A program made the translations under genes and the position numbers. 64,000 nt of DNA. Source: Macrostomum lignano (taxonomy: Eukaryota). The notes beneath the pieces are model-generated. The model was not told the origin of the DNA, did no database searches, and saw only the letters and a list, made by a program, of their open reading frames with translations. The number at the start of each line of letters is the position of its first letter. Positions within the stretch are counted from its first letter, which is position 1. Below, in pieces: positions 14,201 through 62,778 of the stretch. The stretch is from positions 248,001 to 312,000 of the forward strand of contig NIVC01000814.1 of assembly GCA_002269645.1 (NCBI GenBank). The letters run 5' to 3'.

Positions 14201-14440
14201 CTGGAATTGGGATTTGGGAAGCTGGAATTGGGATTTGGGAAGCTGGAATTGGGATTTGGGAAGCTGGAATTGGGATTTGGGAAGCTGGAATTGGGAATTG
14301 GGAATCGTTTAATCGAGGAATCTGAAGCGAGTAAAATTACTGGCAATCGCAGCAGCAGACTCAAGAAGAAGCTGCACAGCCATCGTCGGAAACGTCGAGA
14401 GGAGGAGTGCGACAGCTGCAGCGGCTTCGGCGGCGCGATG

Positions 14441-14479
<39 letters not shown>

Positions 14480-26809: not shown

Positions 26810-26910
26810 ATGAGACAGGCGCCGCCCAATTCCGTATCCGCTGCCGCAGCAGCAACAGCAGCAATAGTTGGCATTCCGTCTCAGTCTAGGCAGGTCCTGC
26901 AGCCTCAGCA

Positions 26911-26967
<57 letters not shown>

Positions 26968-29900
26968 ACCACAGAAGCGAGTAGACACACTGAGGTTCTT
27001 CGCAGCCAGCACAACTGCTCATGGTTTTCACAAGCTGAACCATCCAGTCAGAGCCTTCCAGATCGGCTGGCTGATACTCATCGGGTGCGCCTTCGCGGGC
27101 TTCAGCGTTCATCTGGTCACTCTAGTCGTGAAATATTTAGACGAACCAATTACTACAAAAATTGATCCCAAAGGCAGCAGGTTTCTCTATCCGGACATTA
27201 CCGTGTGCAACCTGATGATGTTCGCCATCAGTAAGATATTCGACCAGCATCTGGTAAACAAGACCCAAAATTCGACAACATCGAAGCCAGTGTTCAGATA
27301 CACTTTGAATAAGAAATTTAAACCATTGTACGACGATATTCAACAAGTCAGAGACATTCTAAACAAGAGTGTCCGGCAGTATCTGCTAGATAAGTTCGGC
27401 AACTACGAGTCCGATACGAGCCTGCTCAGGGTTGAAGATGACGGTCTGTACAATCTGCCAAGTGAGTTGCGCTGACTTCGCTGCTCTTCTGCTATAGAGA
27501 CAAAGGCTAGAGTTCAAAGGGTGATGCCGCGGAGCACTTCCTTCAATTAGATACTCCCTGTCACCTGAGTCTTTGGGTTCCGATAGTAATTAATTAGCAA
27601 CGCCCTGAGTTTTAACAATATTAGTTTAAAGTGGAGGTGCACTAAGCCAGAATATATATTTGTTATAGTCTACGACAAAAAGATTAAGACGAACTTCATG
27701 ACGACGATACTCGACAAAGTTAAAACTCCCACGATTTAACATCGTGCAGCGTCCTTTTTAATTTAGTTGTCTATTTAGTTGTCCATGACAATAATAATAA
27801 TATACTAATTGATTACACCTGCCATAACGGCAGATGTGCAGCCGACAGCTCAGCCGCAGCTATTGCGCGGCGCATCTGAAGGCTGCGTACGGCTGTTTAG
27901 TCCGAAGACTGGGGGGGGGGGTCGCCACACACACCCTCAATCACCCCAGCTAATGCTGGTACCCATTTAATTCCAGTGGGATCCGGAATCGAACCCCCGA
28001 CTCATGACTCAAGTCGTGAGTCCGACGCTCTAACCACTAGGCTGCACCACCCTATAGCGACAAAAAAGATGAAGACAAAGTTACTCGACAAAGCTAAAAC
28101 TCACGATTTTTTACGTTAGCTGTCGACGAACAAAGCTCATTGTGACAGACATTAAACCCACAGATTTGGTCATCCGAGACACCTACGGCTTGGAGAGAGT
28201 CTCCCAGTTCGCCCTCGATCCCAAAGAGATGCTGCTCTGGTGCTCGTTCGGTTCTCTGGCCTGCGACCACAACGACTTCTCCGCGATGACGCTGACCGCC
28301 TATCCATCCTGCCTGACGTTTAGCCTGGATAAGTTCCGACAACGACGGGGCACTTTGGTGAACGATCTGAACGAATTGCGAATGGTGCTGTTCACTGACT
28401 CGGTGAACCGGCATCCAGATATCACGGCGGCTTTAGCCAACGCGCCAGGTACGGTTCGAAGATATTTGGGTAGCTCAACGGTAAGGCGTTCGAATCGATC
28501 GCGTTTAAGTAAAAATAATACCTGCAGAACGACTGCGGGCTCACTGGCGCAACGCCTTCGGCGAAATGTTCCCAAAACTAATTCTGAAGCTTGAGAACAC
28601 TCTCAAGCGTACGCAGGCACGCACTCATACAAACGCTCACACAGGGGGTGTGAAACAGACCTGACGTTCTAATCGTCAAGGCATGTACACTGTTTGTGCC
28701 TTGGAGATGGCATTCGAGGAATCGAACCAGGGGTCGTGCGGCCCGGGAATCGGACACGTTTACCACTGAGAACGTCAATTAGACACCATTCGAATCCTTG
28801 AAACAAAGCTTATTTCAATTTTTGTAGGCGACGAGTTTAACATGCAGACGAACGGTGGAGCAGCCGTGCTCATTCACCTCCCGGGCACCTATCCAACCAA
28901 TGGTCTTCTAATAGAAGCTTCAAACAATCAGGAAACCATAGTAGACGTTCGTTATCAAAAGTACACGGCCATGAACACTAGGAAGATGCAGTGTCTGGAC
29001 ATGGAAGCCTCCGGACCGTCGGACACCACAAGCTACATGGTGGTGAAGGATGGCAAGGCAACGCTGGAACAGTTCAAGAAATTGCCAATCGACTGTCGAG
29101 TTCGGGCTGCTCAGGAATACCTTGTGGAAAACTGCGGATTCGTGGATCCAAACAAACCGATTGGATCCGAATTTATCGAACAGCATCGCAGAGGCAACTT
29201 GTCGAACTTGTACCTGAACTCGTCCAGTCCGGACCCCGGATACATAATCGATCTAGTGAGCGAAGTGTTCAACAGCACCAACCAGAGCAGCAATGGAACT
29301 TACCGACTGCCAACCATTATTGAGAGCCTGTTGGACAATGAGACATGCTTGAGAATGGCTCGCATCCTGGTGACCAACGATACCAGAATGCAGAGCTGCT
29401 TAGAGAACTGTCTCACTAGGACCTACTCAGTAGGCTTCATGTCGAACGCTTGGCCAGTGTCAACCGGCGAGTTTCTCCAGCCGCTGCTCGAACGATGGCT
29501 TCAATCCAATGTGTTCTTTCTCAATGGAACGTCACGATCGGCGCAAACGATCAACACGGACTTCGTCCGAGCGACCAACTGGCATCTGCATCAAGCGTTC
29601 AATCGGTTAGACGAGAGCCAGGATACCACAGTGGCGCAGAATTTCCTGGCTTTACGAATTCGAGTCGGTGACAGCCTCGGCCTGGGTCTACTCACCGAGG
29701 AGAACTGGGGCTATCAAGTGTACGATCTCATGTCCGATATTGGCGGCATACTGGGACTCTATCTTGGCATGAGCGTGCTCACACTCTGCGAGATGATCGA
29801 ACTCTGCCTGAGGCTGTTCGCGTTCAACTCGATTCTGACTTCTAGGGAGAGATTTATTGAAAATCAGAGACGAGGCTGCCGGCCCGCTGGCGGAGTCCCA

Positions 29901-30050
29901 GGCGGCTTGGCAATGAATGGCGTCAACAGCGGCATGGACTTGGACTTGGACGATGAGGAACCTGAAGGCATCCGGCAAGCTGATGAGCAGGAGGGCTCAA
30001 ATCAGCGGAGAGCAAATGGTTTGGCTAACGGCAGTTATCAGATTGGATAG
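26810..30050 (+). CDS. DEG/ENaC (amiloride-sensitive) sodium channel subunit, ~730 aa, 3 exons
   Basis: Exons 26810-27461, 28120-28448, 28828-30050. STTAHG pre-TM1 motif, TM1, YPDITVCN, GGAAVLIHLPGTYP, YSVGFMSNAWP, TM2 LMSDIGGILGLYLGMSVLTLCE with GxS filter. The exon 2-3 junction is in phase; the exon 1-2 junction is off by one base (see findings). Confidence 0.88.
27790..28052 (-). mobile_element. tRNA-derived SINE family 1, internally deleted, in channel intron 1
   Basis: Minus-strand head with A box TAGTGGTTAGAGC and B box GGTTCGATTCC; body AATGGGTACCAGCATTAGCTGGGG; (TTA)n tail. Confidence 0.75.
28525..28780 (-). mobile_element. tRNA-derived SINE family 2, in channel intron 2
   Basis: Minus-strand TCAGTGGTAAACG and GGTTCGATTCC boxes followed by the GTGTACATGCC...CTGTGTGAGCG core; related to 42235-42535. 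Confidence 0.65.
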
Positions 30051-30869: not shown

Positions 30870-33800
30870 TCAACGACTGAACTGTACTCCTGGCTCCTCC
30901 ATTTGGAGTGGGCGGTTTTTGCAGTACAGGTAGATTCCGATGAAGCCCATGCCAACCAGGATGCTGACCAGTAGAATTCCCAACACTGCCAGCACGGTGG
31001 CCACCGCTGACAGGCCGATGGTGTCGCCCGGGTTGACGCTGTCGTTTCGTTCAATCCAGATTGAGCCATCGGTGTCGTATTGGCCTGGAATTAAAGTAAA
31101 GACCGGTGAGGAACCGGTAAAGACCGGGGAGTAACCGGTAAAGACCTGCGAGAGGAACCGGTATATAAAGAGCGGTGAGGAACCGGTGAAGACCGGTGAG
31201 GAACCAGAAAAGATCGATAAGGAATCGATAAAGAATGGTGACGAACCAGTAAATACCGGTGACGAACCGGTAAATACCGGTGATTTTGACACATGCACCA
31301 TGTAAAGACAGAAAAATATCAGAGTAATTTTTATTACTGAAAATTGAATTTTTGAGTTAATTTAATTCTTTTTCGAAATAGCTTTCATAAATGATTGTTG
31401 GTGAAAAAAATCGACTATGATGAAAGTAAAACCGCGAAATCTTCTCTGAGCTATGTGATCTTAACAAAGTGGATTTCTGGCTGTCGAAAAGAAAGATTTA
31501 TTTACAATTCAAGTATCACGAAATCTCTGCATGCAGTGATGACGTGCGTGACCAGCTCGCCTTACCGTTACTCAGGAATAAGTTCGAGTCTTTAACGAAA
31601 AATTTAAATTCGGTAAGAAACGATTTATAGTACGTTTTTTATATAGCTCAAAAATGGTGTACACCAGGCTTACGTCGCTCACACGGTGTACACCAGGCAC
31701 ACGCTCACACAGGGTGTACACCAGGCACACGCTCACACAGGGTGTACACCAGGCACACGCTCACACAGGGTGTACACCAGGCACACGCTCACACAGAAAG
31801 TACACCAGGCACACGCTCACACAGGGTGTACACCCGGCACACGCTCACACAGGGTGTACACCAGGCACACGCTCACACAGGGTGTACACCAGGCACACGC
31901 TCACACAGGGTGTACACCAGGCACACGCTCACACAGGGTGTACACCAGGCACACGCTCACACAGAATGTACACCAGGCACACGCTCACACAGGGTGTACA
32001 CCAGGCACACGCTCACACAGGGTGTACACCAGGCACACGCTCACACAGAATGTACACCAGGCACACGCTCACACAGGGTGTACACCAGGCACACGCTCAC
32101 ACAGGGTGTACACCAGGCACACGCTCACACAGGGTGTACACCAGGCACACGCTCACACAGGATGTACACCAGGCACACGCTCACACAGGGTGTACACCAG
32201 GCACACGCTCACACAGGGTGTACACCAGGCACACGCTCACACAGGGTGTACACCCGGCAGCGCGCATAGCATTGTAATATTGTAGTTTGTACTACATGTA
32301 CTTTGCCCATCAAAAGGTGTCATTATTGCACTCTCATTTCAGTCTTATTCAAATACGAGTACAAACTGTTTCGTTCAAGCAGCAAAATGGTAAACTTAAG
32401 TGCAAATAACTCAGTTCAAAGGCTGATTCACGATTCACCATTTATGGTAAGATAAACTGAAAATTATGCACTTGATATGGCTATGCTTGAACTTGATTTG
32501 AGCATTGGGCAACTGGATTGGAAAACCATGTAACGATTTTGGTAGATATAGATGATAAAACGCGGGAAAGCGGTCACGTGATGAAATTTTTTGTACATAG
32601 GGTAAATGTAGCACCGCACAGGATCAGGTGATAAGTAGCTTGTAACATGGACAATAATCTCATTGCTCCTTTCTAACCTTTGAGCCGCTGCTAATATCCA
32701 TATAGGTCGCCGGGGTAAATTGCGTCCTGCGATTTTGCTATTTCAATTTCATTAAATCAGCTACCCTAGCTGGTACAGTTGAGATATTCCTCAGTTACTT
32801 TGCTAGGGTTTAATGTCTGAATTGAGAGCTGGTGAGGGTTTAGATGCCTGCAATGAGAACCGGTGATGGTTTAGATGTCTACATTGAGGACCGGTGAGGG
32901 TTTAGATGTCTACATTGAGGACCGGTGAGGGTTTAGATGTCTACATTGAGGACCGGTGAGGGTTTAGATGTCTACATTGAGGACCGGTGAGGGTTTAGAT
33001 GTCTACATTGAGGACCGGTGAGGGTTTAGATGTCTACATTGAGAACCGGTGAGGGTTTAGATGCCTGGATTGAGAACCAGTGAGGATTTAGATGTCTACA
33101 TTGAGAACGGGTGAGGGTTTAGATGTCTACATTGAGAACCGGTGAGGGTTTAGATATCTACATTGAGAACCGGTGAGGGTTTAGATGCCTGAATTGAGAA
33201 CCGGTGAGGGTTTAGATGCCTGAACTGAGAACCGGTGAGGGTTTAGATGCCTGAATTGAGAACCGGTGAGGGTTTAGATGCCTGAATTGAGAACCGGTGA
33301 GGGTTTAGATGCCTGAACTGAGAACCGGTGAGGGTTTAGATGCCTGAACTGAGAACCGGTGTGGGTTTAGATGCCTGAACTGAGAACCGGTGAGGGATTA
33401 GATGTCTACATTGAGAACCGGTGAGGGTTTAGATGTCTACATTGAGAACCGGTGAGGGTTTAGATGACTACATTGAGAACCGGTGAGGGTTTAGATGTCT
33501 ACATTGAGAACCGGTGAGGGTTTAGATGCCTGAATTGAGAACCGGTGAGGGATTAGATGTCTACATTGAGAACCGGTGAGGGTTTAGATGCCTGAATTGA
33601 GAACCGGTGAGGGTTTAGATGCCTGAACTGAGAACCGGTGAGGGTTTAGATGCCTGAATTGAGAACCGGTGAGGGTTTAGATGCCTGAATTGAGAACCGG
33701 TGAGGGTTTAGATGCCTGAACTGAGAACCGGTGAGGGTTTAGATGCCTGAATTGAGAACCGGTGAGGGTTTAGATGCCTGAATTGAGAACCGGTGAGGGT

Positions 33801-36800
33801 TTAGATGCCTGAATTTAGAACTGGTGAGGGTTTAGATGCCTGAATTGAGAACCGGTGAGGGTTTAGATGCCTGAATTGAGAACCGGTGAGGGTTTAGATG
33901 CCTGAATTTAGAACTGGTGAGGGTTTAGATGCCTGAATTGAGAACCGGTGAGGGTTTAGATGCCTGAATTGAGAACCGGTGAGGGTTTAGATGCCTGAAT
34001 TGAGAACCGGTGAGGGTTTAGATGCCTGAATTTAGAACTGGTGAGGGTTTAGATGCCTGAATTTAGAACTGGTGAGGGTTTAGATGCCTGAATTTAGAAC
34101 CGGTGAGGGTTTAGATGCCTGAATTTAGAACCGGTGAGGGTTTAGATGCCTGAATTTAGAACCGGTGAGGGTTTAGATGTCGGCAATGAGAACTCACGAC
34201 TGTAGTAGGCGCAGGACGGCACTCCGCTTGAGCCGCTAGGTTTAGTTACCAAGGCCACCCCGGGCACTCGAATGCTACAAGTAGACCTCACTTCGTTCCC
34301 ATTGTACGGCTCGCAGTAATAAAATCCATTGCATTTTTCGCCATAGTCTTCAACGCATCGACGAGAGCAATAATCCAGGTTGAGGTCGGAGTGGGTGGCC
34401 GTGTAAGCTGACAGGTCCGGTTGAGACACCTTGAACTGCTGCTTGAAATCCGTGGTGAACGACCTCGAATAGTGAGTACAGTTCAGGTTGGGCTCTGATT
34501 TCACCGAATCGTCTGATTTGTGGCTGGCACTCAGGTAGCAGAATTTCTTCAGGCCTTCGCCGAAATCGCAGATGTCGAAACTGCGACACGGCTTTGAGGG
34601 ACTCGAGCCGACACAGGCGGCTGCGCACTCCCGATCTGTGTCCACCAGCTGCAGGTCTTTGTGCACGTCGATCAGGCGGGAGAGGCCCGGCTCTTTGGTG
34701 AACAGACCGAGCTCCGTCTCTGGGGAAGGGAGTTTGTGGTTGAGCAACTCTCTACCTGCGTACCTTTATTGGTGTCTTCGTGTCTTGATGTCTGAGTGTC
34801 TTGGTGTCTGAGTGTCTTGATGTCTGAGTGTCTTGATGTCTGAATGTCTTCGTGTCTTGATGTCTTGGTGTCTTGATGTCTGAGTGTCTTGATGTCTGAA
34901 TGTCTTCGTGTCTTGATGTCTTCGTGTCTTGATGTCTGAGTGTCTTGATGTCTGAGTGTCTTGATGTCTGAGTGTCTTGATGTCTGAATGTCTTGGTGTC
35001 TTCGTGTCTTGATGTCTGAGTGTCTTGATGTTTTCGTGTCTTAGTGTCTTCGTGTCTTGATGTCTGAGTGTCTTGATCTCTGAGTGTCTTGATGTTTTCG
35101 TGTCTTAGTGTCTTCGTGTCTTGATGTCTGAGTGTCTTGATGTCTGAGTGTCTTGATGTCTGAGTGTCTTGATGTCTGAGTGTCTTGATGTCTGAATGTC
35201 TTGATTTCCGAGTGTCTTGATGTCCGAATGTCTTGATTTCCGAGTGTCTTGATGTCCGAATGTCTTGATTTCCGAGTGTCTTGATTTCCGAGTGTCTTGA
35301 TTTCCGAGTGTCTTGATGTCTTCGTGTCTTGATGTCTGAGTGTCTTGATGTCTGAGTGTCTTGATGTCTGAGTGTCTTGATGTCTGAATGTCTTGGTGTC
35401 TTCGTGTCTTGATGTCTGAGTGTCTTGAAGTTTTCGTGTCTTAGTGTCTTCGTGTCTTGATGTCTGAGTGTCTTGATCTCTGAGTGTCTTGATGTTTTCG
35501 TGTCTTAGTGTCTTCGTGTCTTGATGTCTGAGTGTCTTGATGTCTTCGTGTCTTGATGTCTGAGTGTCTTGATGTCTGAGTGTCTTGATGTCCGAGTGTC
35601 TTGATGTCCGAGTGTCTTGATTTCCGAGTGTCTTGATGTCTGAATGTCTTGATTTCCGAGTGTCTTGATGTCCGAATGTCTTGATTTCCGAGTGTCTTGA
35701 TGTCCGAATGTCTTGATTTCCGAGTGTCTTGATGTCCGAATGTCTTGATTTCCGAGTGTCTTGATTTCCGAGTGTCTTGATTTCCGAGTGTCTTGATGTC
35801 TTCGTGTCTTGATGTCTGAGTGTCTTGATGTCTGAGTGTCTTGATGTCTAAGTGTCTTGATGTTTGAATGTCTTGATTTCCGAGTGTCTTGATGTCCGAA
35901 TGTCTTGATTTCCGAGTGTCTTGATGTCTGAGTGTCTTGATGTCTGAATGTCTTGATTTCCGAGTGTCTTGATGTCCGAATGTCTTGATATCTGAGTGTC
36001 TTGATGTCCGAATGTCTTGATATCTGAGTGTCTTGATGTCTGAGTGTCTTGGTGTCTCACGACTCAACTAACACTGGTAACTCACTATCGTACAGGTTGC
36101 ACAGTCCTCTCTGCACAACCTTGTCAGGCTGCTCCCTCGGCGAGGCGTCATTGAGCAGGCACTGGCCCAGGCTGTAGCAGTAGGTGAACGATTTGCACTC
36201 AAAATCTGCGTTGCCAAGGCAAGCTTCGGCGCAGTCGTCAACAGACAGGGCATCCAGCATGGCTCTGGTTGGCGGCATTCCCGCACTTTTGGTCACTTCG
36301 AACTGGAACAGGTGTCTGCCAGTCAGAGCCAGGTCTACGTTTGGTCGAACTTCGAATTGTTCAATATCGAGAGCGGTGATGTTGACAATGTCGATGTTTC
36401 CCGTTTCCGGCGTGATTTTCTCCATTGGAACCCGGAATAGGCTGCTGTCAACGTAGGTCACTAGAAGGTCGAATGCCGTCTCCAAAGATAGCTCAAGGGC
36501 GTCTGGGCGGATCACTGATACCGGGCCTGAAAATCACATTGGCGGTGATCTTCTTTGAAGTTTCTCTAATTAATTAATTTTTTTCTACCTTTGCTTACAA
36601 ACTAATCAGTCGGAACCATTACATAAAAGACTCGCTGCTCTTATCAGCACGTGACTCACCTATCATACAGGTATAATTGCTGTTCTATTATCAGCAGGTG
36701 ACTGGGCTATATCATACAGGTATAATTGCTGTTCTATTATCAGCAGGTGACTGGGCTATATCATACAGGTATAATTGCTGTTCTATTATCAGCAGGTGAC

Positions 36801-39800
36801 TGGGCTATATCATACAGGTATAATTGCTGTTCTATTATCAGCAGGTGACTGGCCTATATCATACAGGTATAATTGCTGTTCTATTATCAGCAGGTGACTG
36901 GGCTATATCATACAGGTATAATTGCTGTTCTATTATCAGCAGGTAAAAAGGTGGAATGTTCTTCTCTTCGGTTATGCAAATATCCCTGGTCACTTTAAAA
37001 TAGCAACAAAAAAACGAACAACAAAAGCAATAAATAGCGATAAGATTTCCGCTACTCAAACAGCTTCTACTCACGAATGAGCACGGAACACTGATGAGTC
37101 TTATCCGGGTTCTCCGTGTCCTTTTTGAAAGACGAGCTCAACAGGCAGTTCGAGCCGGATTTCGAGCCGGGGCAGAAGGCCACACTGTTGCAGGGCGGCA
37201 TCAGAAGGCTGTTGCAGCGGCGAAGACAGTCCAGCTCGCTGGCTACATTGGCAGTCTGCTCGGCGCTTTCAATGTACCGGTTTGGTCCAGTGAGTCGGTT
37301 GAACTGGGCTGAAATGCCGTTTTTTTTAAATAAGTTATTAAATTATTTGAAATAATAATGAAACAGGTAAGAGACTAGCGCCCCTGGTGCTAAAGCCCCT
37401 GGTGCTAAAGCCCCTGTGCTAAAGCCTCTGGTGCTAAAGCCCCTGGTGCTAATGCCCCTGGTGCTAATGCCCCTGGTGCTAAAGCCCCTGGTGCCTTAGA
37501 GCTCCGTTTCCAATCCAGATCTCGATTTTGATAAGTCCATGAACCGAAATCTTGAGCATTACTTAAAGAACCCTATTAAAAAATGATGAAAGGAGATCTC
37601 AGTATTTAAAGCCAAGCTAAATCGCACAATTATCAATTCACGAATGAATTTTTATCCAAAGAGCACAGCAGCTCGTACAGGTTCTTGCTGCGCAAATGCG
37701 CGAATATCAATGTTGGCCTTAAGTCTGTTTCAGATTATCCTCTGATAATCCCCCGACAGTAGAATCACCAGCTAAAATGTAATTAAGTATGCAATAGATG
37801 CAGCGGATTCCGTCCTCACCGTACGGATGTGGCCCATCTAGCAGGGTGAAGATTAAATAGATGAATACATCGTCATAGTCGAGTCTTACTCGCTGAAATC
37901 TGATCGGATTAACAAAACCCAGGTCAGCGTTGGCCAGTACTTTAGTGGCCCGGCGAATGAATAAATTTTGACTGCCCTTCACGTACTTGTCGTAGATACC
38001 GCCTGTGGTCATAGATAGAATTTGTGTCTATTTGTTACATCCATAGGCAAAAATAGTCATAGTCAGCAATCAGAAATCTGTGGGAGTCCTCTGAGCATTG
38101 AGTAATCTATAGAAGTCAGCTGATCACTCGATTGTTTATGGGATCGAGTCAGCTGATCACTCGATTGTCTATGGAAGTCAGCTGATCACTCGATTGTCTA
38201 TAGAAGTCAGCTGATCACTCGATTGTCTATGGAAGTCAGCTGATCACTCGATTGTCTATAGAAGTCAGCTGATCACTCGATTGTCTATGGAAGTCAGCTG
38301 ATCACTCGATTGTCTATAGAAGTCAGCTGATCACTCGATTGTCTATGGAAGTCAGCTGATCACTCGATTGTCTATGGAAGTCAGCTGATCACTCGATTGT
38401 CTATGGGAGTCAGCTGATCACTCGGTTGTCTATGGGAGTCAGCTGATCACTCGGTTGTCTATGGGAGTCAGCTGATCAATCAGTTGTCTATGGGAGTCAG
38501 CTGATCAATCAGTTGTCTATGGGAGTCAGCTGATCAATCAGTTGTCTATGGAAGTCAGCTGATCACTCGGTTGTCTATGGAAGTCAGCTGATCACTCGAT
38601 TGTCTATAGAAGTCAGCTGATCACTCGATTGTCTATGGAAGTCAGCTGATCACTCGATTGTCTATAGAAGTCAGCTGATCACTCGATTGTCTATGGAAGT
38701 CAGCTGATCACTCGATTGTCTATGGAAGTCAGCTGATCACTCGATTGTCTATGGAAGTCAGCTGATCACTCGATTGTCTATGGGAGTCAGCTGATCACTC
38801 GGTTGTCTATGGGAGTCAGCTGATCAATCAGTTGTCTATGGGAGTCAGCTGATCATTCGCTTGTCTATGGGAGTCAGCTAATTAATCAGTTGTCGATGGG
38901 AGTCAGCTGATCAATCAGTTGTCTATGGGAGTCAGCTGATCATTCGGTTGTCTATGGGAGTCAGCTAATTAATCAGTTGTCGATGGGAGTCAGCTGATCA
39001 ATCAGTTGTCTATGGGAGTCAGCTGATCACTCGGTTGTCTATGGGAGTCAGCTGATCAATCAGTTGTCTATGGGAGTCAGCTGATCAATCAGTTGTCTAT
39101 GGGAGTCAGCTGATCAATCAGTTGTCTATGGGAGTCAGCTGATCACTCGGTTGTCTATGGGAGTCAGCTGATCACTCGGTTGTCTATGGGAGTCAGCTGA
39201 TCAATCAGTTGTCTATGGAAGTCAGCTGATCACTCGGTTGTCTATGGGAGTCAGCTGATCACTCGATTGTCTATGGAAGTCAGCTGATCACTCGGTTGTC
39301 TATGGGAGTCAGCTGATCAATCAGTTGTCTATGGGAGTCAGCTGATCAATCAGTTGTCTATGGGAGTCAGCTGATCAATCAGTTGTCTATGGGAGTCAGC
39401 TGATCAATCAGTTGTAGGTTGTCCCCTTACCATTCAAGAATCGAATAAGAATATTCTTTCTCTCAGCCTTGGCGTAGCACTGGGTAACGTCCAAGTCGTA
39501 GGGTTGAAGCTGATCAAAATCTTTCTCAGCGTCGGGTTCAACTTGGGTGTCGAAATTGTAGAAATTGTAAACCTCCTGGTAGTTAAAAGTCGGATCATCA
39601 ATCTGAAATGTTGCGTTGTTATATTTTTTTACCCCTGTTTAAGAGGTGTTTAGCTGCAGAATCATGCAGCTCCCATGTCAAGATGCCTTGCCTGTTGTTC
39701 TAAATCTATTTATTGATTTCGGTGCAACCTTCTTGCTCAACATAAACAAAAGTACAAAAACCCTCAAACTCACTTGGCCCAGCGATTTGTAGTTGGTAAT

Positions 39801-42800
39801 CCTCAACTGTACAGGGATATTCTTCCCTTGGTTGATTTTGTTCTTTCCCAGAACGACTTCAGACACGCGAGGCTGCAAAAAACAAGAGAAAGACGAAACG
39901 ATTTCAATATGAGTTTGACTAATGACCAGGATATGACCAGATGGGTCTGGCACTCTACCTACGAAGGCCAACTATATCCCAAAGCAAAAAGTATAATTGT
40001 AAACTGTCACAGCGTTGGCAAAGTCAGGGCCTGTGGCCACATCCCAGACTCACATCAAGCATCTCGTATTCAAAAGTGAAGTTCATGCCCGGCCGACCTT
40101 TGATTTCATAGTCCTTTCGCAGCGATATGTATCGGTGAATTGGAATGCCGCGAACAACGCGCTAGAAATGTTGAAAGGAATTGTTTTTGTAATATTTTTG
40201 CACTTTAAGCGACATTGTCACACAACCGGCGACAGGCATTACTGCCCATTCCGCCGACTCCCCTGAGCAGGCACACAAGAGCGCGGATACGTACGCAGTC
40301 GTACGCACAGGCACACACTCACACAGGAGTGTACAGCGGCCCTAACTTTATCGATCGTTAGGCATGTACACTTCACTGTGCCTTGGGGTTGGCCCTCAAG
40401 CTGGGCGCTAATTGCACGCTTTGACTCCTCGTCAGTAAAATTGTTTGCAATCGCAATTTTACTGATAAAAGTTAATTACTGTAAACTGTAAGACCTTTAC
40501 CTTGCCAGTAAACTGATAGGTCTCATCGATCCTGAACAAATCCTTGGGACTTCTCAGCTCGATAATGTCCCAGCCAGGCCGGTCCTTGATCGGTGGATCT
40601 TCAGTGTCGAAGAAGTCGTTAGAGATCGGCTTGTCGGTGCAGTTGCCGATCAGGTCGTCGATAAAATAGGAGATACCTGTTTAAATGATTTTTGAGATGG
40701 CAGTTTAGCTTGCTTGCATTGTAACTTTTGGCACCTTTATGACTGCGCCCATATCGCCGATCCCCTCACTCTCAAGGTGTAGAACGGTCGTGGGGTCCTC
40801 ATTGTCAACCCAATTTTTCACGATGAGGTTTAACTAAGTTAGTCTTAATTAAATTGAAAAGACTCTGTATACTCGTAGTAATGGCAACTTTCGTGTGGAT
40901 CGCACATCAATAGTGTTTCAGGGCGCAATCCCTCCTCATGAGATACTTCTTTTTTAATTTATTTTTTTCAAATTTGTGCTCAAAGCGTGCATGATTTAAT
41001 AGCCTGTTTGTTAGTCTGCTTCAATCAAAGCATTGCTAATTGCTTTTGTATCTGGAAACCGAAATAATAAACGAAACATTCGATTCTAAACCAATATGCT
41101 TAGTTTGCTTAATTCATAAATGGAAAATTTATGATCTTATTTATTTCTATCTTTTTCATAAATGGAAAATGGAAAATGGAAAATTTCGTTTGTAAATGGT
41201 ATACTTACCAGTAGTGAAATCCTGAATAACAGTCATTGAGCCAGGATTATAGAATGGCGGTTTGGTATCTCCATTGGGGTCTCTGAACTGGTACTTGACT
41301 AAGAATTGCGACCCATCGTAGTACACGTTGCCGTACTGCACCATCTCCAGGGCGGGATCGTGCACCAGCATCTCCTGGGTGTAGCTCATCACAGCTGGCA
41401 GCTCTGGCGGCTTCTGCACCTGCATCCGATCTTCGCAGTACACTCCGGTTGGGGTCTACAGATTGAGTTGCGGAGTTATTGATTGGAAAATTCAAATGAC
41501 GTTATGAACTTTGAAATTGTAGAAGTTTCCCTGTAGACCGATTGAAAAAAAACATTACATTTTTTCAACCTTTAAATTGACAGGTTGAGATAATAAGCTA
41601 GAGATTTATATTCATGATAGCAACAATAATAATACTTGTAGGAGGGCTATGAGGCCATCCTAGCTCAACGCATGCCAAATTAACATCGGAACGGAGCCAC
41701 GAGGTTAAATCAATAACTTAATTGAAACAGTCGATTGGAAACGCCGAGACATCCTGTCCGGGTCCCTTTCTTTTGCTCCCTTTCCTCGTATCCAGGGGGC
41801 AAGGGGGCCTCGCCCCCTCCCCTCCCAATGGGCTGGCAAAGACATGATGCCCTAAATGACACGTCAAACGGTCCTCGAGCACTGTCGTCCCACGTCAAGA
41901 GCACAGTAAGCAGCATTGGCCAAAAACTGATTAGTACAGTACTAGCTAGACCTACAGCAGTAAAACAAATCTCTGAACACCAAAACTCACGTCAAAGATG
42001 GTATTTTCAGCCATCAGTACGTCGCGAAACGACACAAAGTCGTAAATCATGTGAAACTTTCTCGGATTGCTAACGTCACCGGCCTCGCCAATGACTTCCG
42101 CACGAACTGGCAGGTTTACATCGTACGGCGTGTTCCAGCTGCTGGCTGCAACAGTCACGTAAGAGTCACAGTAAAAACTTGGTTTACACAATACTTCGTA
42201 ATAAGTTTAATAATTGTAGGAGAACTGCAAACAACCCTGGCGCAACGCCTTCGGTGAAATCGTTCCACGAGAAACGTTGACGGCGATTCTGGCCATTCCG
42301 CTCACTCCTAAGCACACAAGCGTGTCAATACTGTACACAGGCACGCAGTCATGCACACGCTCATACAGGGTGTACATCGGCCCTCTGACTTTCTAATCAG
42401 TCAGGCATGTACACTTTCTGGGCCTTCTGAGCAGTCATGACTGTGAATCGCACGACAACGCACGTCTTCGTACGGAATCGAACCTGGGGTCGTGACGCGA
42501 GACTCATACGCGTTTGCCGCTGAACTGCTCCGCCCCACTAGACTTACATACGTGTAGTGACCTTATGTAACATTTAAGTAATACCTGAAGGTCTTCAAAT
42601 TCTACCGAAGTTTTGGACTAAAATTTTGCTGAAATCTACTGGAAAGTTAAATCTGATAAACCTTTACATTTATTGTATCGTGTTTAACTGCACTATAAAG
42701 TACTTAAAAGGGTCACAGAAATGTTTTAAGCATCTTTTCGGGCCCTAACTTACCAGAAAAGTACCAGTGCACTTCAAAAACCGCCTTTCGTTCCTTCCAA

Positions 42801-43902
42801 GTCTGACAACTGTACCAATAGTCCACCGTGATGCCGCGAACTATCGATTTGTTGCGGTACTCCTGTCAAATATTAGACCGACCCCAAGGTTACTTGTTGA
42901 AATATTTTAAATGTACAATTAAACTCCTTCTAAGGAAACGGGTATCTATACTTACCATTCCAAATTCTTTGCTAAATCTAAGCATTAGTGCCGACGATGG
43001 CAGCAGTCTACCATCTACGCCGAACAGTAGATCCAAATCAGTCTTGCCAGTCATGTTGATCACGAGGCAGACCAGGTCATCTGCGGTTGCACGAAACACA
43101 TGCTGATAATTGTATTACCATAATTTAAAGTTCCAGCATGATAGCAGAACTCACTGAATATAACGTAGATCTCTCTGGTGGCATTGTTATAAATATAGTC
43201 GTCAATCTCTCCATCTTTTTGGTAGCGTCGGATCCTCACGTTTCCTAGGTAACCGTCAAACCATTCCTGAAATTCGTAAGTCTGATTCTTAGTGAGGATG
43301 TTCATCTCTATCCTAGTCTGGTAGGATGGTGGAATGTAGGGCAGGCCGACGCCCTCTGAAAAAGAAAGAATGAAAATAAAATGAGAAAATTAGGATTGCT
43401 TCAGGATAATTACGAGCGTATATTCGTTAAAATATACGAGTATGTATGCTTTCAAGATTAAGCTCTCCACGAGTCTTAGTAGTCTTCAATGCGTGGCAGT
43501 TGAACCGTCAAGACAAAGATATCAGAACCTTGTAAAGCAGACGTTGTACCGATGGAACATCAAGACAAAGCTACCAGAACCTTGCATAACAGACGTTGTA
43601 CCGATGGAACATCAAGACAAAGCTACCAGAACCTTGCATAACAGACGTTGTACCGATGGAACATCAAGACAAAGCTACCAGAACCTTGCATAACAGACGT
43701 TGTACCGATGAATAATCTAGTAAAAGCTATTAGAATCTCGAAAGAACCTCGTGTAGCTGAGGAACTCCCTATAAAACATGGTGCAAGCCTCACCTGTTGT
43801 ATTAACTTTCTGGCAGAATTCGCCATTGGCGAAGCCGCAGAATTGACACGAGATTACTGCCAGAGCCAACAGAATCCACGCTACAAGCTGTCGGATGGCC
43901 AT
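30870..43902 (-). CDS. Type I membrane protein: signal peptide, two predicted ependymin/LolA-like domains, linker, four PAN/apple domains, TM, short tail; 1043 aa, 15 exons
   Basis: Exons 43794-43902, 43155-43355, 42956-43080, 42754-42862, 41991-42145, 41209-41455, 40501-40676, 40054-40161, 39774-39872, 39431-39602, 37820-38002, 37075-37308, 36086-36526, 34198-34755, 30870-31084. All junctions GT-AG and in phase, total 3132 nt. Signal peptide MAIRQLVAWILLALAVISC; PAN Cys patterns (CAEAC...CKSFTYC...C; CAAAC...CRSFDIC; CSRRC...CNGFYYC; CLRRC...CNSVAFC); TM VATVLAVLGILLVSILVGMGFIGIYLY. The fold of the N-terminal half is inferred. Confidence 0.85.
31655..32255. repeat. 28-bp intronic minisatellite
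   Basis: Unit CAGGCACACGCTCACACAGGGTGTACAC; GGGTGTACA at 31712 and 31740. Confidence 0.95.
32820..34190. repeat. 31-bp intronic minisatellite
   Basis: Unit GATGCCTGAATTGAGAACCGGTGAGGGTTTA; abuts the minus-strand donor at 34197. Confidence 0.95.
34775..36055. repeat. 16-bp intronic minisatellite
   Basis: Unit GTGTCTTGATGTCTGA; fills almost all of the intron 34756-36085. Confidence 0.95.
36660..36945. repeat. 49-bp intronic minisatellite
   Basis: Unit TATCATACAGGTATAATTGCTGTTCTATTATCAGCAGGTGACTGGGCTA, ~6 copies. Confidence 0.9.
37380..37495. repeat. 15-bp intronic minisatellite
   Basis: Unit GCCCCTGGTGCTAAA. Confidence 0.85.
38115..39415. repeat. 29-bp intronic minisatellite
   Basis: Unit GTCAGCTGATCACTCGATTGTCTATGGAA; abuts the minus-strand donor at 39430. 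Confidence 0.95.
40205..40425. mobile_element. Dispersed headless repeat sharing the SINE family 2 core
   Basis: TAAGCGACATTGTCACACAACCGGCGA...AGGCATGTACACTTCACTGTGCC...AAGCTGGGCGCTAATTGCACG; near-identical to 46060-46335 (reverse complement) and 48478-48667. Confidence 0.75.
42235..42535 (-). mobile_element. tRNA-derived SINE family 2 copy
   Basis: Shares CTGGCGCAACGCCTTCGG.GAAAT and the core with 28525-28780; minus-strand B box GGTTCGATTCC near 42470-42485. Confidence 0.65.
43505..43710. repeat. 52-bp intronic minisatellite
   Basis: Unit GTACCGATGGAACATCAAGACAAAGCTACCAGAACCTTGCATAACAGACGTT, ~3.5 copies. Confidence 0.9.
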
Positions 43903-45688: not shown

Positions 45689-48600
45689 ATGAGCGCTGCA
45701 CTGGTTGCTCATTCAGCAACGACTCAGTCAGGACAGCGAGAGCGCATCCGACGTCGCCTAGTTGACAGCGGCTTCCTGGATGTTGAACGGTCGAGCCTAC
45801 ACCGGGCACTAGACGAGGGTCGGTACCAGGCTGTGCTTTATCAGCTCAAATTAGGTATGGATCCCAATGTTCGAAGTCGGCATGGACTGACGCCTTTGAT
45901 GCGATGCGCCCAGGTAGGCAAAGGATCTGGAGGGATTGCTCTTTGATTGTACAGTTCGGTCCCTACTTAATTCTATGGGCAACTGAAGTTAGAAGTATAC
46001 GCTACGCCAAGGAAGCCTCTCTATATTCGCTTCGCTCCTTTGCGATCGCAAAGCTAGACTTTGCGCGAACGCGTTACAGGACGCTTTACTGTAGCGTCCT
46101 TCATGGGGTTTGTAGCTTGGCTCTGCTCGTGCAATTAACGCCCAGCTTGAAGGCCAACCCCCAAGGCACAGTGAAGTGCACATGCCCAACGATAAACAAA
46201 GCTAGGGCCGCTGTACACTCCTGTGTGAGTGCGTATGACTGCGTACGCATCCGCGCGCTTGTGTGCCTGCTCAGGGGAGTCGGCGGAATGGGCAGTAATG
46301 CCTGTCGCCGGCCGTGTGACAATGTCGATTAAAGTGCGCCAGACCCCTTGATCGAAAAAGAAAGTAGCTCTCTTCTAGGTCAGTTGTCCATGCGTCGTAA
46401 ACGCTACTACATGTATCGTAGTCATTATGCTTTGAGTTGAGTTCATTGTAAAAAATCAGCCTTTAGGATAATGCAATCGTCTATGGTTAAACCATGAGCA
46501 CATTTATTTATTTTTTTCACTTAAACTTCAGGATAATGATTTCAAACTCGGGATAATGGACGCCTATTTTTAGAAGAAACCGGAAAACACCAACAACAAA
46601 AGATTAGCGCTATGGAAAGTTAATTGTGCAGTATCAATATGGCGCAATTGTCATAGTGCCGAAGACCATTACAGATTTCAATTGTTGAAAGTGCAGTTGT
46701 TCATAATAAAGATATTCCGACCGTTCATCTGACGACCATGAGACACGCTCACTGCTTCTTTCACGATGGAACTTTGGATGCTGATGTCAGCAGGCATTGT
46801 TACTTGACCGTGGGTCGCGGCGCTTTGTCCCATGTTCAACGCACGCGACACTGCATCGCTGCATTGTTGCAGGGACTTGTCCCGTTTAACTGCCAGGTAG
46901 CGCCGGACCGTGCTCTCGGACTTTTGACCCGTGATAGCCATGATCTCGCTCATCGAATGCCCAGCCGATTCCAGGTCTCAAGAAAGTGCAAGAAGTTCAA
47001 AAAGTCTTCGTTATCCTTCATGTCCCTCTGAGATGTGGAAAGTCTTGAGATCCAATTGAGTTCGCTGCTAGATACGTTGGCTAAACTTTCGACAGGCAGA
47101 TTGCCCCAGTTGATCGGATATGACGTCTTGTTCTCCATGGCCAAGCGAATGTAGCTATTTACGTTTTATTCTCTCTTTCTCTCCACATCTCCTTCCTTTC
47201 CACCCTCTTAACCCCCAGCCTGTTTGCAACTTCGTTGTCTATGGCCCAAACTCCAGTAAACCACCTCAGTCTTTATGTCTCTCTCTCCTCGGTAACCCCT
47301 CTCTCCTTTCGATGTTCTTTTTGTCTATGGCCCCACTGAAATTCGACAATGGGGCCGGACTATTATCCTAAAGTCTCACTTACGAATAACCAACCATTGT
47401 GAGTTTAAAAATTGTCTATGGTTTTTGTCTATGGTTAAAAATTTGGCTTAATTTACAGTGAGTTTTTCACTGCTTCGCGTGATATAGAACCTGTGTTAGA
47501 CAGTTTTGCCAAGGTTAAATGCATTTCCAAGTGATTCTATCGCTATAATTTGCATTTGCGTTTTGTTTCATCATAATTCAAGTTTTTTAATGAATTTAAT
47601 GAATTTTCCAATTATCACCAAACAGGTGCGACCCCCATCGGCTAGTCTGCAGCTGATTCGGGCCCTACTCGATCGAGGCGCCGATCCGGATTTGACAGAT
47701 TCTTACGGCAACAATCTCCTTCAAGTGGCCGTGCGAGAGTCCAACATCGCTCTGGTCCGTCTTCTCCTAACCGAGAACAATGTGAACTTTCACCACCGGA
47801 ATGCCAATGGCGACACGGTGCTGCACCTGCTAGCTGGCCAATCGCCCGAACTGTGCCGGATGGTTCTGCGAGCAGCCAGGCGCTTCCATATCGACTGCGA
47901 TCAGGGCAACGCGGACGGCGTCACTCCGTTGATGGCCGCCTGTCGCGCTGGCAACCTGCCAGTGGCCCAGCTGTTTGCCAGCTCCGGCAGCGCCTCTTTC
48001 ACTAAGCGAGACCTTCGTCGACGTTGGACAGCCTACGATTGGCTGCGCACTGGCTTGGGCAGAGCTGGCGACAGCTCCGGCAAGCTCGACGAGATGCAAC
48101 CGCAGCAGCAGCAGCAATGGTTGCTTCGACTGCAACACCCGGAGTTAGCAGCCGAATCGGAGGCCGATCCCTATCAGCAGATTCGGGAGTCCAGGCGACT
48201 GGAAACTCTGTCGCGATTGTTCAATACGGCTCAGCCGCGACGCGACTCCGGTCAACCTGATGCCGATGAGGATCAACAAGACCAGCAGGGTAGTGAGCGC
48301 CAGACCGTCGCTGCAGCAGAGGCGCCTCACCTTCCGCCGGTTCCGGCCACTCGTCAGGCGTCTCAGCTGCAGCTGCTGGAAGACGCTCGCAGTCGAAGCA
48401 GTCAGAGCAGCTTCTGCCGAGCTGCCACTGCCGATTGTCGAATTAGCCAGGTGAGAGTCCTACGCTGTTTTCCGCTATAAGCGACATTGTCACACAACCG
48501 GCGAGAAGCATTTGCCCGGTCGGCAGGCACACAAGCGCGCGGACACGTACGGAGTCATACGCACAGGCACACACTCACACAGGAGTCTGCACAGCGACCC

Positions 48601-56326: not shown

Positions 56327-56371
<45 letters not shown>

Positions 56372-56466
56372 CTAGTTAGTCAGTTAGCTAGTTAGTTAGT
56401 TAGTTAGTTAGTTAGCTAGTTAGTCAGTTGGTTAGTTAGTTAGTTAGTTAGCTAGTTAGTCAGTTG

Positions 56467-56499
<33 letters not shown>

Positions 56500-56516
56500 C
56501 TAGTTAGTCAGTTAGC

Positions 56517-56547
<31 letters not shown>

Positions 56548-62534: not shown

Positions 62535-62619
<85 letters not shown>

Positions 62620-62711
62620 GGCAGGCAGGCAGGCAGGCAGGCAGACAGAAACTTAAGACAAACACTAAGACAGACAGACAGACAGACAGACAGACAGGCA
62701 GGCAGGCAGGC

Positions 62712-62778
<67 letters not shown>

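What the first reader, a model, noticed from the sequence alone, without database searches (positions are those of the whole stretch)
30870..43902. 1043-aa membrane protein joining two predicted ependymin/LolA-like domains to four PAN/apple domains
Seen: a complete 15-exon, in-phase model that the ORF track shows only as fragments, with signal peptide, TM and a short tail. The N-terminal half holds two internally similar beta-rich units (PYIPPSYQTRIEMNI...EWFDG...VRGITVDYWYSC and PELPAVMSYTQEM...VYYDG...VRGIPIHRY). Established: ependymin-related proteins adopt the LolA lipid-carrier fold, and PAN/apple modules bind proteins or glycans. Inference: a surface or endolysosomal lipid-capture receptor coupled to a glycan/protein-binding stalk. 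I know of no functional description of this architecture, although similar uncharacterised proteins may exist in other invertebrates.
Basis: partly seen in the sequence, partly recalled or inferred. Interest (0 to 1): 0.7.

Follow-up and report, generated by a model that had tools for sequence, protein, structure and literature searches.

The report
Flatworm membrane protein: tandem LolA-like plus PAN
This is a real, already catalogued Macrostomum lignano gene for a single-pass membrane glycoprotein with two ependymin/LolA-fold domains and four PAN/apple modules; the design is conserved in molluscs, annelids and nemerteans, and nobody has studied its function.

Summary
A 15-exon, all GT-AG, in-frame gene lies on the minus strand (CDS 43902..30870). 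It encodes 1031 aa, not 1043, and is identical to NCBI 'hypothetical protein BOX15_Mlig027239g2' of Macrostomum lignano.

The fold claim also holds. An AlphaFold2 model of aa 28-561 (pLDDT 81.6) hits only ependymin-related proteins at the top of a Foldseek PDB search, then RseB, VioE and LolA. The two N-terminal units are true internal duplicates (hhalign 99.9%, E = 1e-30). Four six-cysteine PAN/apple modules are supported by Pfam (three of the four), by cysteine spacing and by Foldseek hits to factor XI, HGF and plasminogen.

The architecture is neither unique nor undescribed in databases. The precomputed Pfam annotation already calls the N-terminal part LolA_2nd_metazoa (PF25898). An exhaustive search finds 372 related clusters. 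Short forms (module + TM) occur in molluscs, a brachiopod, echinoderms and amphioxus. PAN-bearing forms occur in molluscs, an annelid, nemerteans and flatworms.

No sequence-level membership in the Ependymin family was found, and no paper on the family. The lipid-capture function remains inference; the pocket could not be examined. Verdict: a catalogued but functionally uncharacterised receptor family, of modest interest.

The parts
30870..43902 (-). Whole CDS, 15 exons, 1031 aa. Exons (high..low): 43902-43794, 43355-43155, 43080-42956, 42862-42754, 42145-41991, 41455-41209, 40676-40501, 40161-40054, 39872-39774, 39602-39431, 38002-37820, 37308-37075, 36526-36086, 34719-34198, 31084-30870.
   Evidence: All introns are GT..AG. 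The translation is identical to P0001.
43794..43902 (-). Exon 1: start codon and signal-peptide-like N-terminus (MAIRQLVAWILLALAVISCQFCGFANG), plus C30, the first conserved Cys of domain 1.
   Evidence: Hydrophobic segment at aa 1. C30 is Cys in 29 of 29 aligned relatives. The signal peptide is judged by eye; no predictor was available.
41435..43355 (-). Domain 1 (about aa 37-240; exons 2-5 and the start of exon 6): first EPDR/LolA-fold domain, with 6 + 5 beta strands and a long loop between them. Invariant or near-invariant C108, C164 and C240.
   Evidence: AF2 secondary structure, Foldseek, hhalign D1 vs D2, Cys conservation.
39500..41434 (-). Domain 2 (about aa 241-470; exons 6-10): second EPDR/LolA-fold domain and an internal duplicate of domain 1. 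Invariant C328, with its likely partner C485 just downstream. Exon 9 (39872-39774, 33 aa, phase 0-0) encodes strands that include the near-invariant Pro of 'IPVQLRI'.
   Evidence: Precomputed Pfam PF25898 LolA_2nd_metazoa.
37820..39499 (-). Domain 3, first half (about aa 478-561; end of exon 10 and exon 11): a small beta-alpha-beta-beta unit. It probably corresponds to Pfam DUF7959 of the short-form relatives.
   Evidence: AF2 models. No hit in the local Pfam copy. The clam homologue carries PF25899 DUF7959, listed after LolA_2nd_metazoa. The correspondence is inferred.
37075..37308 (-). PAN/apple 1 (aa 562-639): exactly exon 12, phase 1-1. Cys 589, 593, 601, 607, 616, 635.
   Evidence: PAN_1 at 21.3 bits, E = 2.4e-4, when scanned alone. 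Cys pattern. Absent from relatives P0025, P0140 and P0147, which otherwise align collinearly.
36086..36526 (-). Exon 13 (aa 640-786, phase 1-1): an alpha-beta-beta linker (about aa 654-697, conserved as 'E..L..A...LK..V..G.F' in relatives), then PAN/apple 2 (Cys 738, 742, 750, 756, 762, 782).
   Evidence: PAN_1 E = 3.9e-9. AF2 secondary structure. Alignment A4.
34198..34719 (-). Exon 14 (aa 787-960, phase 1-1): PAN/apple 3 (Cys 818-867) and PAN/apple 4 (Cys 904-956).
   Evidence: PAN3 gives PAN_1 E = 5.3e-4. PAN4 has no Pfam hit but the same six-Cys spacing and the strand-helix-strand pattern. Foldseek aligns 435-448 columns to the four-apple discs of factor XI and prekallikrein.
30870..31084 (-). 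Exon 15 (aa 961-1031): juxtamembrane 'QYDTDG' (the Y-x-P-D-G motif of relatives), a TM segment of about aa 981-1013, a cytosolic tail of about 17 aa (CKNRPLQMEEPGVQFSR), and the stop codon.
   Evidence: Hydropathy scan, sequence, alignment A4.

Best explanation
The locus is a genuine, transcribed M. lignano gene that is already in the public annotation. It encodes a type I membrane glycoprotein of an uncharacterised animal family (Pfam LolA_2nd_metazoa / DUF7959).

Shown here:
- From the N-terminus outward, the ectodomain has two tandemly duplicated beta-clam domains of the ependymin/LolA fold, each with family-invariant cysteines.
- Next comes a small alpha/beta domain, then four PAN/apple modules, then one TM helix and a short tail with no recognisable catalytic or signalling domain.
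- PAN1 is a single phase 1-1 exon.

Inferred:
- The protein works as a non-enzymatic binding receptor at the cell surface or in the endolysosomal system.
- The membrane-distal LolA-like domains hold a hydrophobic ligand (a lipid, carotenoid-like molecule or acyl chain), as EPDR1, sponge EPD-BCP1 and LolA do.
- The PAN modules attach to a glycan or protein partner, as in HGF, factor XI and apicomplexan apple lectins.
- The short tail serves only sorting or anchoring.

My confidence is about 0.9 for the architecture and about 0.35 for the hydrophobic-ligand mechanism.
For: Gene model:
- 15 exons, all GT-AG, with a translation identical to NCBI BOX15_Mlig027239g2.
- The window region is 100% identical to NIVC01000814.1.
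- Collinear ~1000-aa relatives are encoded on 3.2-3.4 kb contigs (P0003 on 3409 nt, P0015 on 3186 nt). These are too short to contain introns of this size, so the parts sit on one mRNA.

Fold of the N-terminal half:
- AF2 model of aa 28-561: pLDDT 81.6, pTM 0.77, with two 6+5-strand domains.
- The Foldseek PDB top 14 hits are all EPDR proteins (8i34 E = 1.4e-7, TM 0.66 normalised to the target; 6e8n, 6jl9, 6jla, 6jld). RseB, VioE, LolA and MucB follow, with probability 1.00.
- D1 and D2 profiles align at 99.9%, E = 1.2e-30, over 183 columns.
- Precomputed Pfam hit to LolA_2nd_metazoa.
- Invariant Cys at 30, 108, 164, 240, 328 and 485. hhalign places the beta6 Cys of both domains opposite EPDR1 C113. 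PMC6363788 reports the C113/C210 disulfide in nearly all EPDRs.

PAN modules:
- PAN_1 scores 51.6 bits against a cut-off of 21.4.
- Four modules share the C-x3-C-x7/8-C-x5-C spacing.
- Foldseek hits to factor XI/prekallikrein apples, the HGF N domain (TM 0.72, rmsd 2.5 A), plasminogen and the SML-2 lectin.

Topology: all 10 N-glycosylation sequons lie N-terminal of the TM segment, and K/R residues follow it.

Conservation: 372 related clusters. PAN-bearing relatives occur in Mollusca, Annelida and Nemertea and mostly form one clade.

Ligand analogy: EPDR1 binds anionic lipids and has a hydrophobic groove (PMC6363788). The top Foldseek hit is the sponge carotenoprotein EPD-BCP1 (PMC10470211).
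Against: - No sequence-level link to Ependymin or LolA. Pfam Ependymin does not hit this protein.
- Profiles of D1 and D2 find no EPDR or LolA chain among PDB sequences.
- hhalign against EPDR1 is not significant (probability 4.7% and 0.6%).
- Foldseek did not report which of the two domains produced the EPDR match. The second domain's fold rests on its homology to the first and on its predicted strand pattern.
- The hydrophobic pocket, which is the feature that matters for the mechanism, could not be inspected.
- The LolA fold also serves non-lipid roles: RseB binds a protein and VioE is an enzyme (PMC6363788).
- No expression, localisation or ligand data exist for any family member.
Confidence: 0.5

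Rival explanations
1. Adhesion or matrix receptor. The EPDR-like domains and PAN modules both act in protein-protein or protein-glycan contacts (cell-matrix, cell-cell, mucus or epidermal secretions), and no lipid ligand is involved.
For: PAN/apple modules are classic protein- and carbohydrate-binding units; the Foldseek hits include factor XI apples bound to kininogen, the heparin-binding HGF N domain and a galactose-binding lectin. Not every LolA-fold protein binds lipid: RseB binds RseA (PMC6363788). The tail is short and has no signalling domain. From my own knowledge, fish ependymins have long been discussed as matrix or anti-adhesive glycoproteins.
Against: The short-form relatives have no PAN modules at all yet keep the tandem LolA-like module, the TM segment and the tail. 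The conserved core activity therefore lies in the LolA-like part. The closest structural relatives of that part (EPDR1, EPD-BCP1, LolA, LprG) bind hydrophobic ligands (PMC6363788; PMC10470211).
Confidence: 0.25
2. Innate-immune pattern-recognition receptor. The LolA-like domains capture microbial lipids or acylated lipoproteins, and the PAN modules bind microbial glycans on the surface of epidermal, gut or phagocytic cells.
For: The LolA fold is the bacterial lipoprotein-acyl-chain carrier, and LolA, LolB and RseB are among the Foldseek hits. The family is expanded into many paralogues in molluscs, with tandem copies in the clam. From my own knowledge, such lineage-specific expansion is common for invertebrate immune receptors.
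Against: There is no signalling domain (TIR, death, ITAM or similar) in the tail. There are no expression or induction data. The paralogue expansion is equally compatible with digestive or transport roles.
Confidence: 0.12
3. Gene-model artefact. Two neighbouring genes, a secreted tandem-EPDR-like protein and a PAN-TM protein, have been fused by prediction.
For: Short forms without PAN exist as separate genes in other species. The introns here are long and full of repeats, which can mislead predictors.
Against: Every junction is canonical and in phase. Relatives from four phyla align collinearly through the domain 3 - PAN1 - linker - PAN2-4 - TM order. Two of those relatives sit on ~3.2-3.4 kb contigs that can only be spliced transcripts. 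The conserved linker after PAN1 matches the sequence that directly follows domain 3 in PAN1-less relatives, so PAN1 is embedded within the conserved protein and does not mark a boundary between two genes. No stop codon or TM segment lies between the halves.
Confidence: 0.03

Closest known systems
Pfam PF25898 LolA_2nd_metazoa / PF25899 DUF7959 proteins (uncharacterised metazoan 'LolA-like domain-containing' proteins, e.g. Mercenaria LOC123542856, S. purpuratus LOC580499, Branchiostoma LOC109467529)
   Same: Homologous over the whole N-terminal half: 29% identity over 96% of aa 28-561 to the clam protein, E = 5.6e-43. They share the signal peptide, the conserved cysteines, the small third domain, a single TM segment and a short tail.
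   Different: Most members are 600-700 aa and lack PAN modules. This gene belongs to the PAN-bearing subfamily (four PAN modules, about 1000 aa) sampled here only in Spiralia.
Ependymin-related proteins (human EPDR1 6E7O/6E8N/6JLD; sponge carotenoprotein EPD-BCP1 8I34)
   Same: These are the best structural matches (probability 1.00, TM 0.57-0.66 normalised to the target). They share the 11-strand (6+5) beta-clam with a long lid loop, a secreted or luminal location, glycosylation, and a conserved Cys on beta6 aligned with EPDR1 C113.
   Different: There is no significant sequence similarity. EPDRs are soluble single-domain proteins of about 200 aa (PMC6280359). Here the domain is duplicated in tandem, fused to other modules and anchored in the membrane. 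The second shelf-II Cys sits at a different position than in EPDR1.
Bacterial LolA/LolB, RseB/MucB, VioE, LprG (LolA-fold superfamily, CATH 2.50.20)
   Same: The same fold class by Foldseek (E from 5e-6 to 2.5e-4).
   Different: The match is weaker than to the EPDRs. The bacterial proteins have no disulfides (PMC6363788), act in the periplasm, and have no PAN or TM context.
Four-apple proteins (factor XI, plasma prekallikrein) and other PAN proteins (HGF N domain, plasminogen PAN, apicomplexan MIC4 and SML-2)
   Same: Four consecutive six-Cys PAN/apple modules. Foldseek aligns 435-448 columns to the factor XI/prekallikrein heavy chains and single modules to HGF N at rmsd 2.5 A.
   Different: No protease domain follows. 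The modules are interrupted by a linker after PAN1 and are tethered to a membrane. The high rmsd (26 A) of the four-module alignment shows that the relative arrangement is not the factor XI disc, or is not reliably predicted (pTM 0.56).

Membership tests
Pfam LolA_2nd_metazoa (PF25898) family of metazoan tandem LolA-like membrane proteins | Match to the family HMM | tested here: met
   A precomputed Pfam hit is listed unmarked (E <= 1e-5) for the identical protein P0001. It could not be reproduced with the local Pfam copy, which returned no PF25898 or PF25899 hit even for the clam protein that carries both precomputed hits, so the model is probably missing from that copy.
Pfam LolA_2nd_metazoa (PF25898) family of metazoan tandem LolA-like membrane proteins | Full-length homology of the N-terminal module to other members | tested here: met
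   phmmer found 372 clusters at E <= 1e-3 and 65 at E <= 1e-30, most aligned across query positions ~10-530. BLASTP to the clam member gives E = 3e-51.
Pfam LolA_2nd_metazoa (PF25898) family of metazoan tandem LolA-like membrane proteins | Signal peptide, single C-terminal TM segment and short tail | tested here: met
   A hydropathy scan shows a C-terminal TM segment in this protein and in most complete relatives. The signal peptide is judged by eye only.
Ependymin / EPDR family (Pfam PF00811) | Match to the Ependymin HMM above the gathering score (32.3 bits) | tested here: not met
   No hit for the whole protein or for either domain, even at E <= 10. The clam homologue gives only 15.9 bits, E = 0.014.
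Ependymin / EPDR family (Pfam PF00811) | 11-stranded LolA-type beta-clam fold | tested here: met
   The Foldseek top 14 hits are all EPDR structures at probability 1.00. Both domains show 6+5 strands, and D1 and D2 are homologous. Which domain gave the Foldseek hit is not reported.
Ependymin / EPDR family (Pfam PF00811) | Conserved cysteine pairs, especially the beta6-to-C-terminal-tail disulfide (EPDR1 C113/C210) | tested here: inconclusive
   Invariant Cys lie on the predicted beta6 and just after the last strand in both domains (C108/C240 and C328/C485). hhalign aligns the beta6 Cys with EPDR1 C113. Without model coordinates, the Cys-Cys distances could not be checked.
Ependymin / EPDR family (Pfam PF00811) | Soluble, single-domain secreted protein of about 200 aa | tested here: not met
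   The protein is 1031 aa, with tandem domains, extra modules and a TM anchor. The median EPDR length is 213 aa (PMC6280359).
LolA-fold lipid or hydrophobic-ligand binders (functional class) | Open hydrophobic cavity on the concave face of the sheet | not testable with these tools
   Structure prediction returns only confidence values and secondary structure, so no pocket analysis was possible.
PAN/apple domain (Pfam PF00024, PAN_1) | HMM match above the gathering score | tested here: met
   The whole protein scores 51.6 bits against a cut-off of 21.4, in three stretches. Scanned alone, the modules give: PAN2 36.7 bits; PAN1 21.3 and PAN3 20.2 bits, just under the cut-off; PAN4 no hit.
PAN/apple domain (Pfam PF00024, PAN_1) | Six-cysteine pattern and the helix-on-sheet fold | tested here: met
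   All four modules have the C-x3-C-x7/8-C-x5-C-x5..11-C-x18..21-C spacing. The AF2 model shows a strand/helix/strand pattern in each. Foldseek hits factor XI/prekallikrein apples, the HGF N domain and plasminogen PAN.
SEA-like / ferredoxin-like juxtamembrane domain (for domain 3 plus linker) | beta-alpha-beta-beta-alpha-beta topology forming one domain | not tested
   Only the order of secondary-structure elements and the continuity seen in PAN1-less relatives suggest it. There was no separate fold search and no Pfam hit.

The most novel reading that the evidence does not exclude
The family is a previously unstudied class of membrane-anchored tandem EPDR/LolA-fold receptors, present across Bilateria in the phyla sampled. 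It would capture hydrophobic molecules (dietary or microbial lipids, carotenoids, acylated lipoproteins) directly at the cell surface. The spiralian subfamily would have gained PAN modules by exon insertion, targeting that capture to glycan-bearing surfaces. If so, this would be an invertebrate lipid-uptake or lipid-sensing receptor with no vertebrate counterpart.
Probability: 0.2. Interest if true: 0.6.

Novelty: already known. Interest (0 to 1): 0.33.

Why it matters
The gene and its domain composition are already in public databases, so the finding adds no new kind of object. It does show that the LolA/ependymin fold exists in animals as a tandem, membrane-tethered module, not only as a small soluble protein. 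That module is conserved from flatworms to echinoderms and amphioxus, and no experimental work on it was found.

M. lignano supports RNAi and transgenesis, so this locus is a practical entry point for asking what EPDR-like domains bind in invertebrates. The physiological role of ependymin-related proteins is still unsettled, even for human EPDR1.

Tried and rejected
- Word-indexed homologue searches returned only the protein itself and one clam homologue, even with a 35-sequence profile. The exhaustive HMMER search was needed to see the family.
- The local Pfam copy returns no PF25898 or PF25899 hit, so those hits could not be reproduced.
- NCBIfam, PHROGs and PADLOC were not scanned because they cover prokaryotes and phages.
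- phmmer and profile HMM searches of the N-terminal half, D1 and D2 against PDB sequences gave only noise: P450, MRPL2 and amidase repeats.
- hhalign of the D1 and D2 profiles against verified human EPDR1 was not significant. I therefore rejected sequence-level membership in the Ependymin family.
- Pairwise BLASTP of D1 against D2 was too weak to prove duplication. Profile-profile comparison settled it.
- Literature searches for the Pfam accessions, the gene ID, orthologue IDs and 'LolA-like domain' found nothing on the family.
- I considered a fused-gene artefact and rejected it.
- The long ORFs inside introns (for example 35441-36067 and 31654-32277) are translations of minisatellite arrays, not exons.


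Full report
**What is at the locus**

I scored GT/AG junctions between the open fragments and obtained a 14-exon in-frame draft. A public protein that matched it showed one more small exon.

The final model has 15 exons. All 14 introns are GT..AG. The ATG is at 43902 and the stop at 30870. The product is 1031 aa and is identical, residue for residue, to NCBI 'hypothetical protein BOX15_Mlig027239g2 [Macrostomum lignano]', which UniRef names 'Apple domain-containing protein'.

The window stretch 20870-53902 is 100% identical to NIVC01000814.1:268870-301902 of assembly GCA_002269645.1. A second contig carries a 96-99% identical copy that encodes the same protein. The length (1043 aa) is not; it is 1031 aa.

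**Is it one gene?**

Yes, as far as sequence evidence can show.

- Relatives of about 1000 aa from a flatworm-like transcript, bivalves, an annelid (Owenia) and a nemertean (Lineus) align collinearly through every part.
- Two of them are encoded on contigs of only 3.2-3.4 kb, which can only be spliced mRNA.
- The conserved linker that follows PAN1 here directly follows domain 3 in three relatives that lack PAN1. PAN1 is therefore embedded within a conserved protein, not placed at a boundary between two genes.

**The N-terminal half**

An AlphaFold2 model of aa 28-561, built on a 35-sequence family alignment, is confident (mean pLDDT 81.6, pTM 0.77). It shows two beta-rich domains, each with six strands, a long loop containing a short helix, and five or six more strands. 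That is the layout described for EPDR1 (PMC6363788). A small beta-alpha-beta-beta domain follows.

| Foldseek PDB hits for this model | Result |
|---|---|
| Ranks 1-14 | All ependymin-related proteins: sponge EPD-BCP1 8i34 (E = 1.4e-7, TM 0.66 normalised to the target); human, mouse and frog EPDR1 |
| Later ranks | RseB, VioE, LolA, MucB |
| Probability | 1.00 for all of these |

The tool does not say which domain matched. Profiles of domain 1 and domain 2, however, align to each other at 99.9% probability (E = 1.2e-30, 183 columns). The duplication is real, and both domains must share the fold.

Six cysteines are invariant or nearly so across the family:

- Domain 1: C30, C108, C164 and C240.
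- Domain 2 and its tail: C328 and C485.

In both domains, one Cys lies on predicted strand 6 and one just after the last strand. hhalign places the strand-6 Cys opposite EPDR1 C113, half of the disulfide that PMC6363788 reports in nearly all EPDRs. I could not check the distances because no coordinates are returned.

**Limits of the ependymin claim**

At the sequence level there is no membership in the Ependymin family.

- Pfam Ependymin does not hit this protein or either domain. The clam homologue reaches only 15.9 bits against a cut-off of 32.3.
- Profile HMMs of each domain find no EPDR or LolA chain among PDB sequences.
- hhalign against human EPDR1 is not significant.

The correct family is a separate one that Pfam curators have already named LolA_2nd_metazoa (PF25898). 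The hit is precomputed for this very protein. A companion family, DUF7959 (PF25899), is present on the clam homologue and probably covers the small third domain. 'Ependymin/LolA-like' is therefore accurate as a statement about fold, not about family.

**The C-terminal half**

- Pfam PAN_1 scores 51.6 bits for the whole protein. Three modules are detected and the fourth is not.
- All four modules have six Cys in the same spacing.
- An AF2 model of aa 472-975 (pLDDT 78.2) shows the helix-on-sheet pattern in each module.
- Foldseek returns the four-apple heavy chains of factor XI and prekallikrein (435-448 aligned columns), the HGF N domain (TM 0.72, rmsd 2.5 A), plasminogen PAN, Toxoplasma MIC4 apples and the Sarcocystis SML-2 lectin.

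Four PAN/apple modules are therefore confirmed. Exons 12, 13 and 14 are all phase 1-1, and PAN1 is exactly exon 12. From general knowledge, this is the classic signature of module insertion by exon shuffling.

**Topology**

The N-terminus is hydrophobic. One hydrophobic segment spans about aa 981-1013, and K/R residues follow it. All ten N-glycosylation sequons lie on the N-terminal side. The tail is about 17 aa with no known domain. This indicates a type I membrane glycoprotein.

**The family**

An exhaustive HMMER search with aa 28-561 finds 372 representative clusters at E <= 1e-3.

| Form | Size and parts | Organisms sampled |
|---|---|---|
| Short forms (most members) | 600-700 aa: module + TM + tail | Gastropods, octopus, Lingula, sea star, sea urchin, amphioxus |
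| PAN-bearing forms (about a quarter of the best 150) | 950-1450 aa: module + PAN modules + TM + tail | Bivalves, gastropods, Owenia, Lineus, Tubulanus, flatworms |

In a neighbour-joining tree of 102 N-terminal modules, the PAN-bearing proteins fall almost entirely in one clade. The tree has no support values, so this is indicative only. All members are named 'uncharacterized', 'Apple domain-containing' or 'LolA-like domain-containing'. Full-text searches for the Pfam accessions, the gene ID, six orthologue IDs and 'LolA-like domain' found no paper on the family.

**How it most likely works**

What is shown is an outward-facing array on a single-pass anchor, with a tail too short to signal on its own. 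The array consists of two disulfide-stapled LolA/EPDR-fold domains, a small domain and four PAN modules.

The mechanism is inferred by analogy. The closest structural relatives are EPDR1, which has a lipid-binding groove (PMC6363788), the sponge EPD-BCP1, which binds carotenoids (PMC10470211), and LolA. On that basis, the distal domains would hold a hydrophobic ligand and the PAN modules would bind a glycan or protein. The protein would then act as a capture or tethering receptor at the surface or in the endolysosomal system.

I put this at about 0.35. The rivals are:

- a purely adhesive or matrix role, at about 0.25;
- an innate-immune lipid or lipoprotein sensor, at about 0.12.

The short forms keep the LolA-like module but have no PAN modules, which argues that the core activity lies in that module.

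**Verdict**

The fold inference is correct. The function is untested. The architecture is already catalogued in Pfam, UniProt and NCBI and is conserved in several phyla, so it is not new as an object. It is a functionally blank family in a tractable model organism. Interest is modest.

Noticed in passing
window 31085-34197, 34720-36085, 38003-39430, 36661-36944, 43508-43710: The gene's introns are largely filled with minisatellite arrays: 31 bp x 45 (ending 4 nt from the exon 14 donor), 28 bp x 21.5, 16 bp x 81 (almost all of intron 13), 29 bp x 46 (almost all of intron 10), 49 bp x 6 and 52 bp x 4. They create long spurious ORFs on both strands.
   Followed up: partly
window 26810-30050 (+): A DEG/ENaC (amiloride-sensitive sodium channel, Pfam ASC) gene. 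ORFs at 26810-27475 and 28842-30050 match the start and end of the ASC profile. It converges tail-to-tail on the gene, and the two stop codons are about 820 bp apart.
   Followed up: partly
window 20126-21043 (+): An ORF for a rhodopsin-family 7TM receptor (7tm_1, E = 1.9e-38).
   Followed up: partly
window 18797-19561 (-): A reverse-transcriptase fragment (RVT_1, E = 1.1e-23), presumably a retroelement remnant.
   Followed up: partly
window 47506-48480 (+) and 54360-57774 (+): An ankyrin-repeat ORF, and further along ORFs with a RhoGAP domain. These are neighbouring genes upstream of the gene's 5' end.
   Followed up: partly
L002 (NIVC01001613.1:95047-120787) vs window 20870-53902: A second genomic copy, 96-99% identical at the DNA level, encodes the identical 1031-aa protein. 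From my own knowledge, this fits the duplicated M. lignano genome.
   Followed up: partly
window 37075-37308, 36086-36526, 34198-34719 (exons 12-14): All three PAN-encoding exons are symmetric phase 1-1. PAN1 is exactly one exon and is absent from otherwise collinear relatives (P0025, P0140, P0147). It appears to interrupt the small third domain.
   Followed up: partly
L003 1-5554 and 10001-26591 (Mercenaria CM038777.1): The clam short-form homologue has a tandem paralogue immediately upstream with the same Pfam content (LolA_2nd_metazoa + DUF7959).
   Followed up: no
relatives P0014 (Haliotis rufescens, 1249 aa) and P0016 (Liolophura, 1245 aa): Each carries two complete copies of the whole N-terminal module, that is four LolA-like domains, before a single TM segment.
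   Followed up: no
relative P0042 (Owenia fusiformis, 1400 aa): The module occupies the C-terminal half (aa 750-1211). UniRef names the protein after an ionotropic glutamate receptor ligand-binding domain, and it has two hydrophobic segments. It may be a fused gene model or a real chimera.
   Followed up: no
window 7220-7816, 10916-12817, 13627-14668, 62403-63366: Long low-complexity or tandem-repeat tracts give large artefactual ORFs on both strands elsewhere in the window.
   Followed up: no
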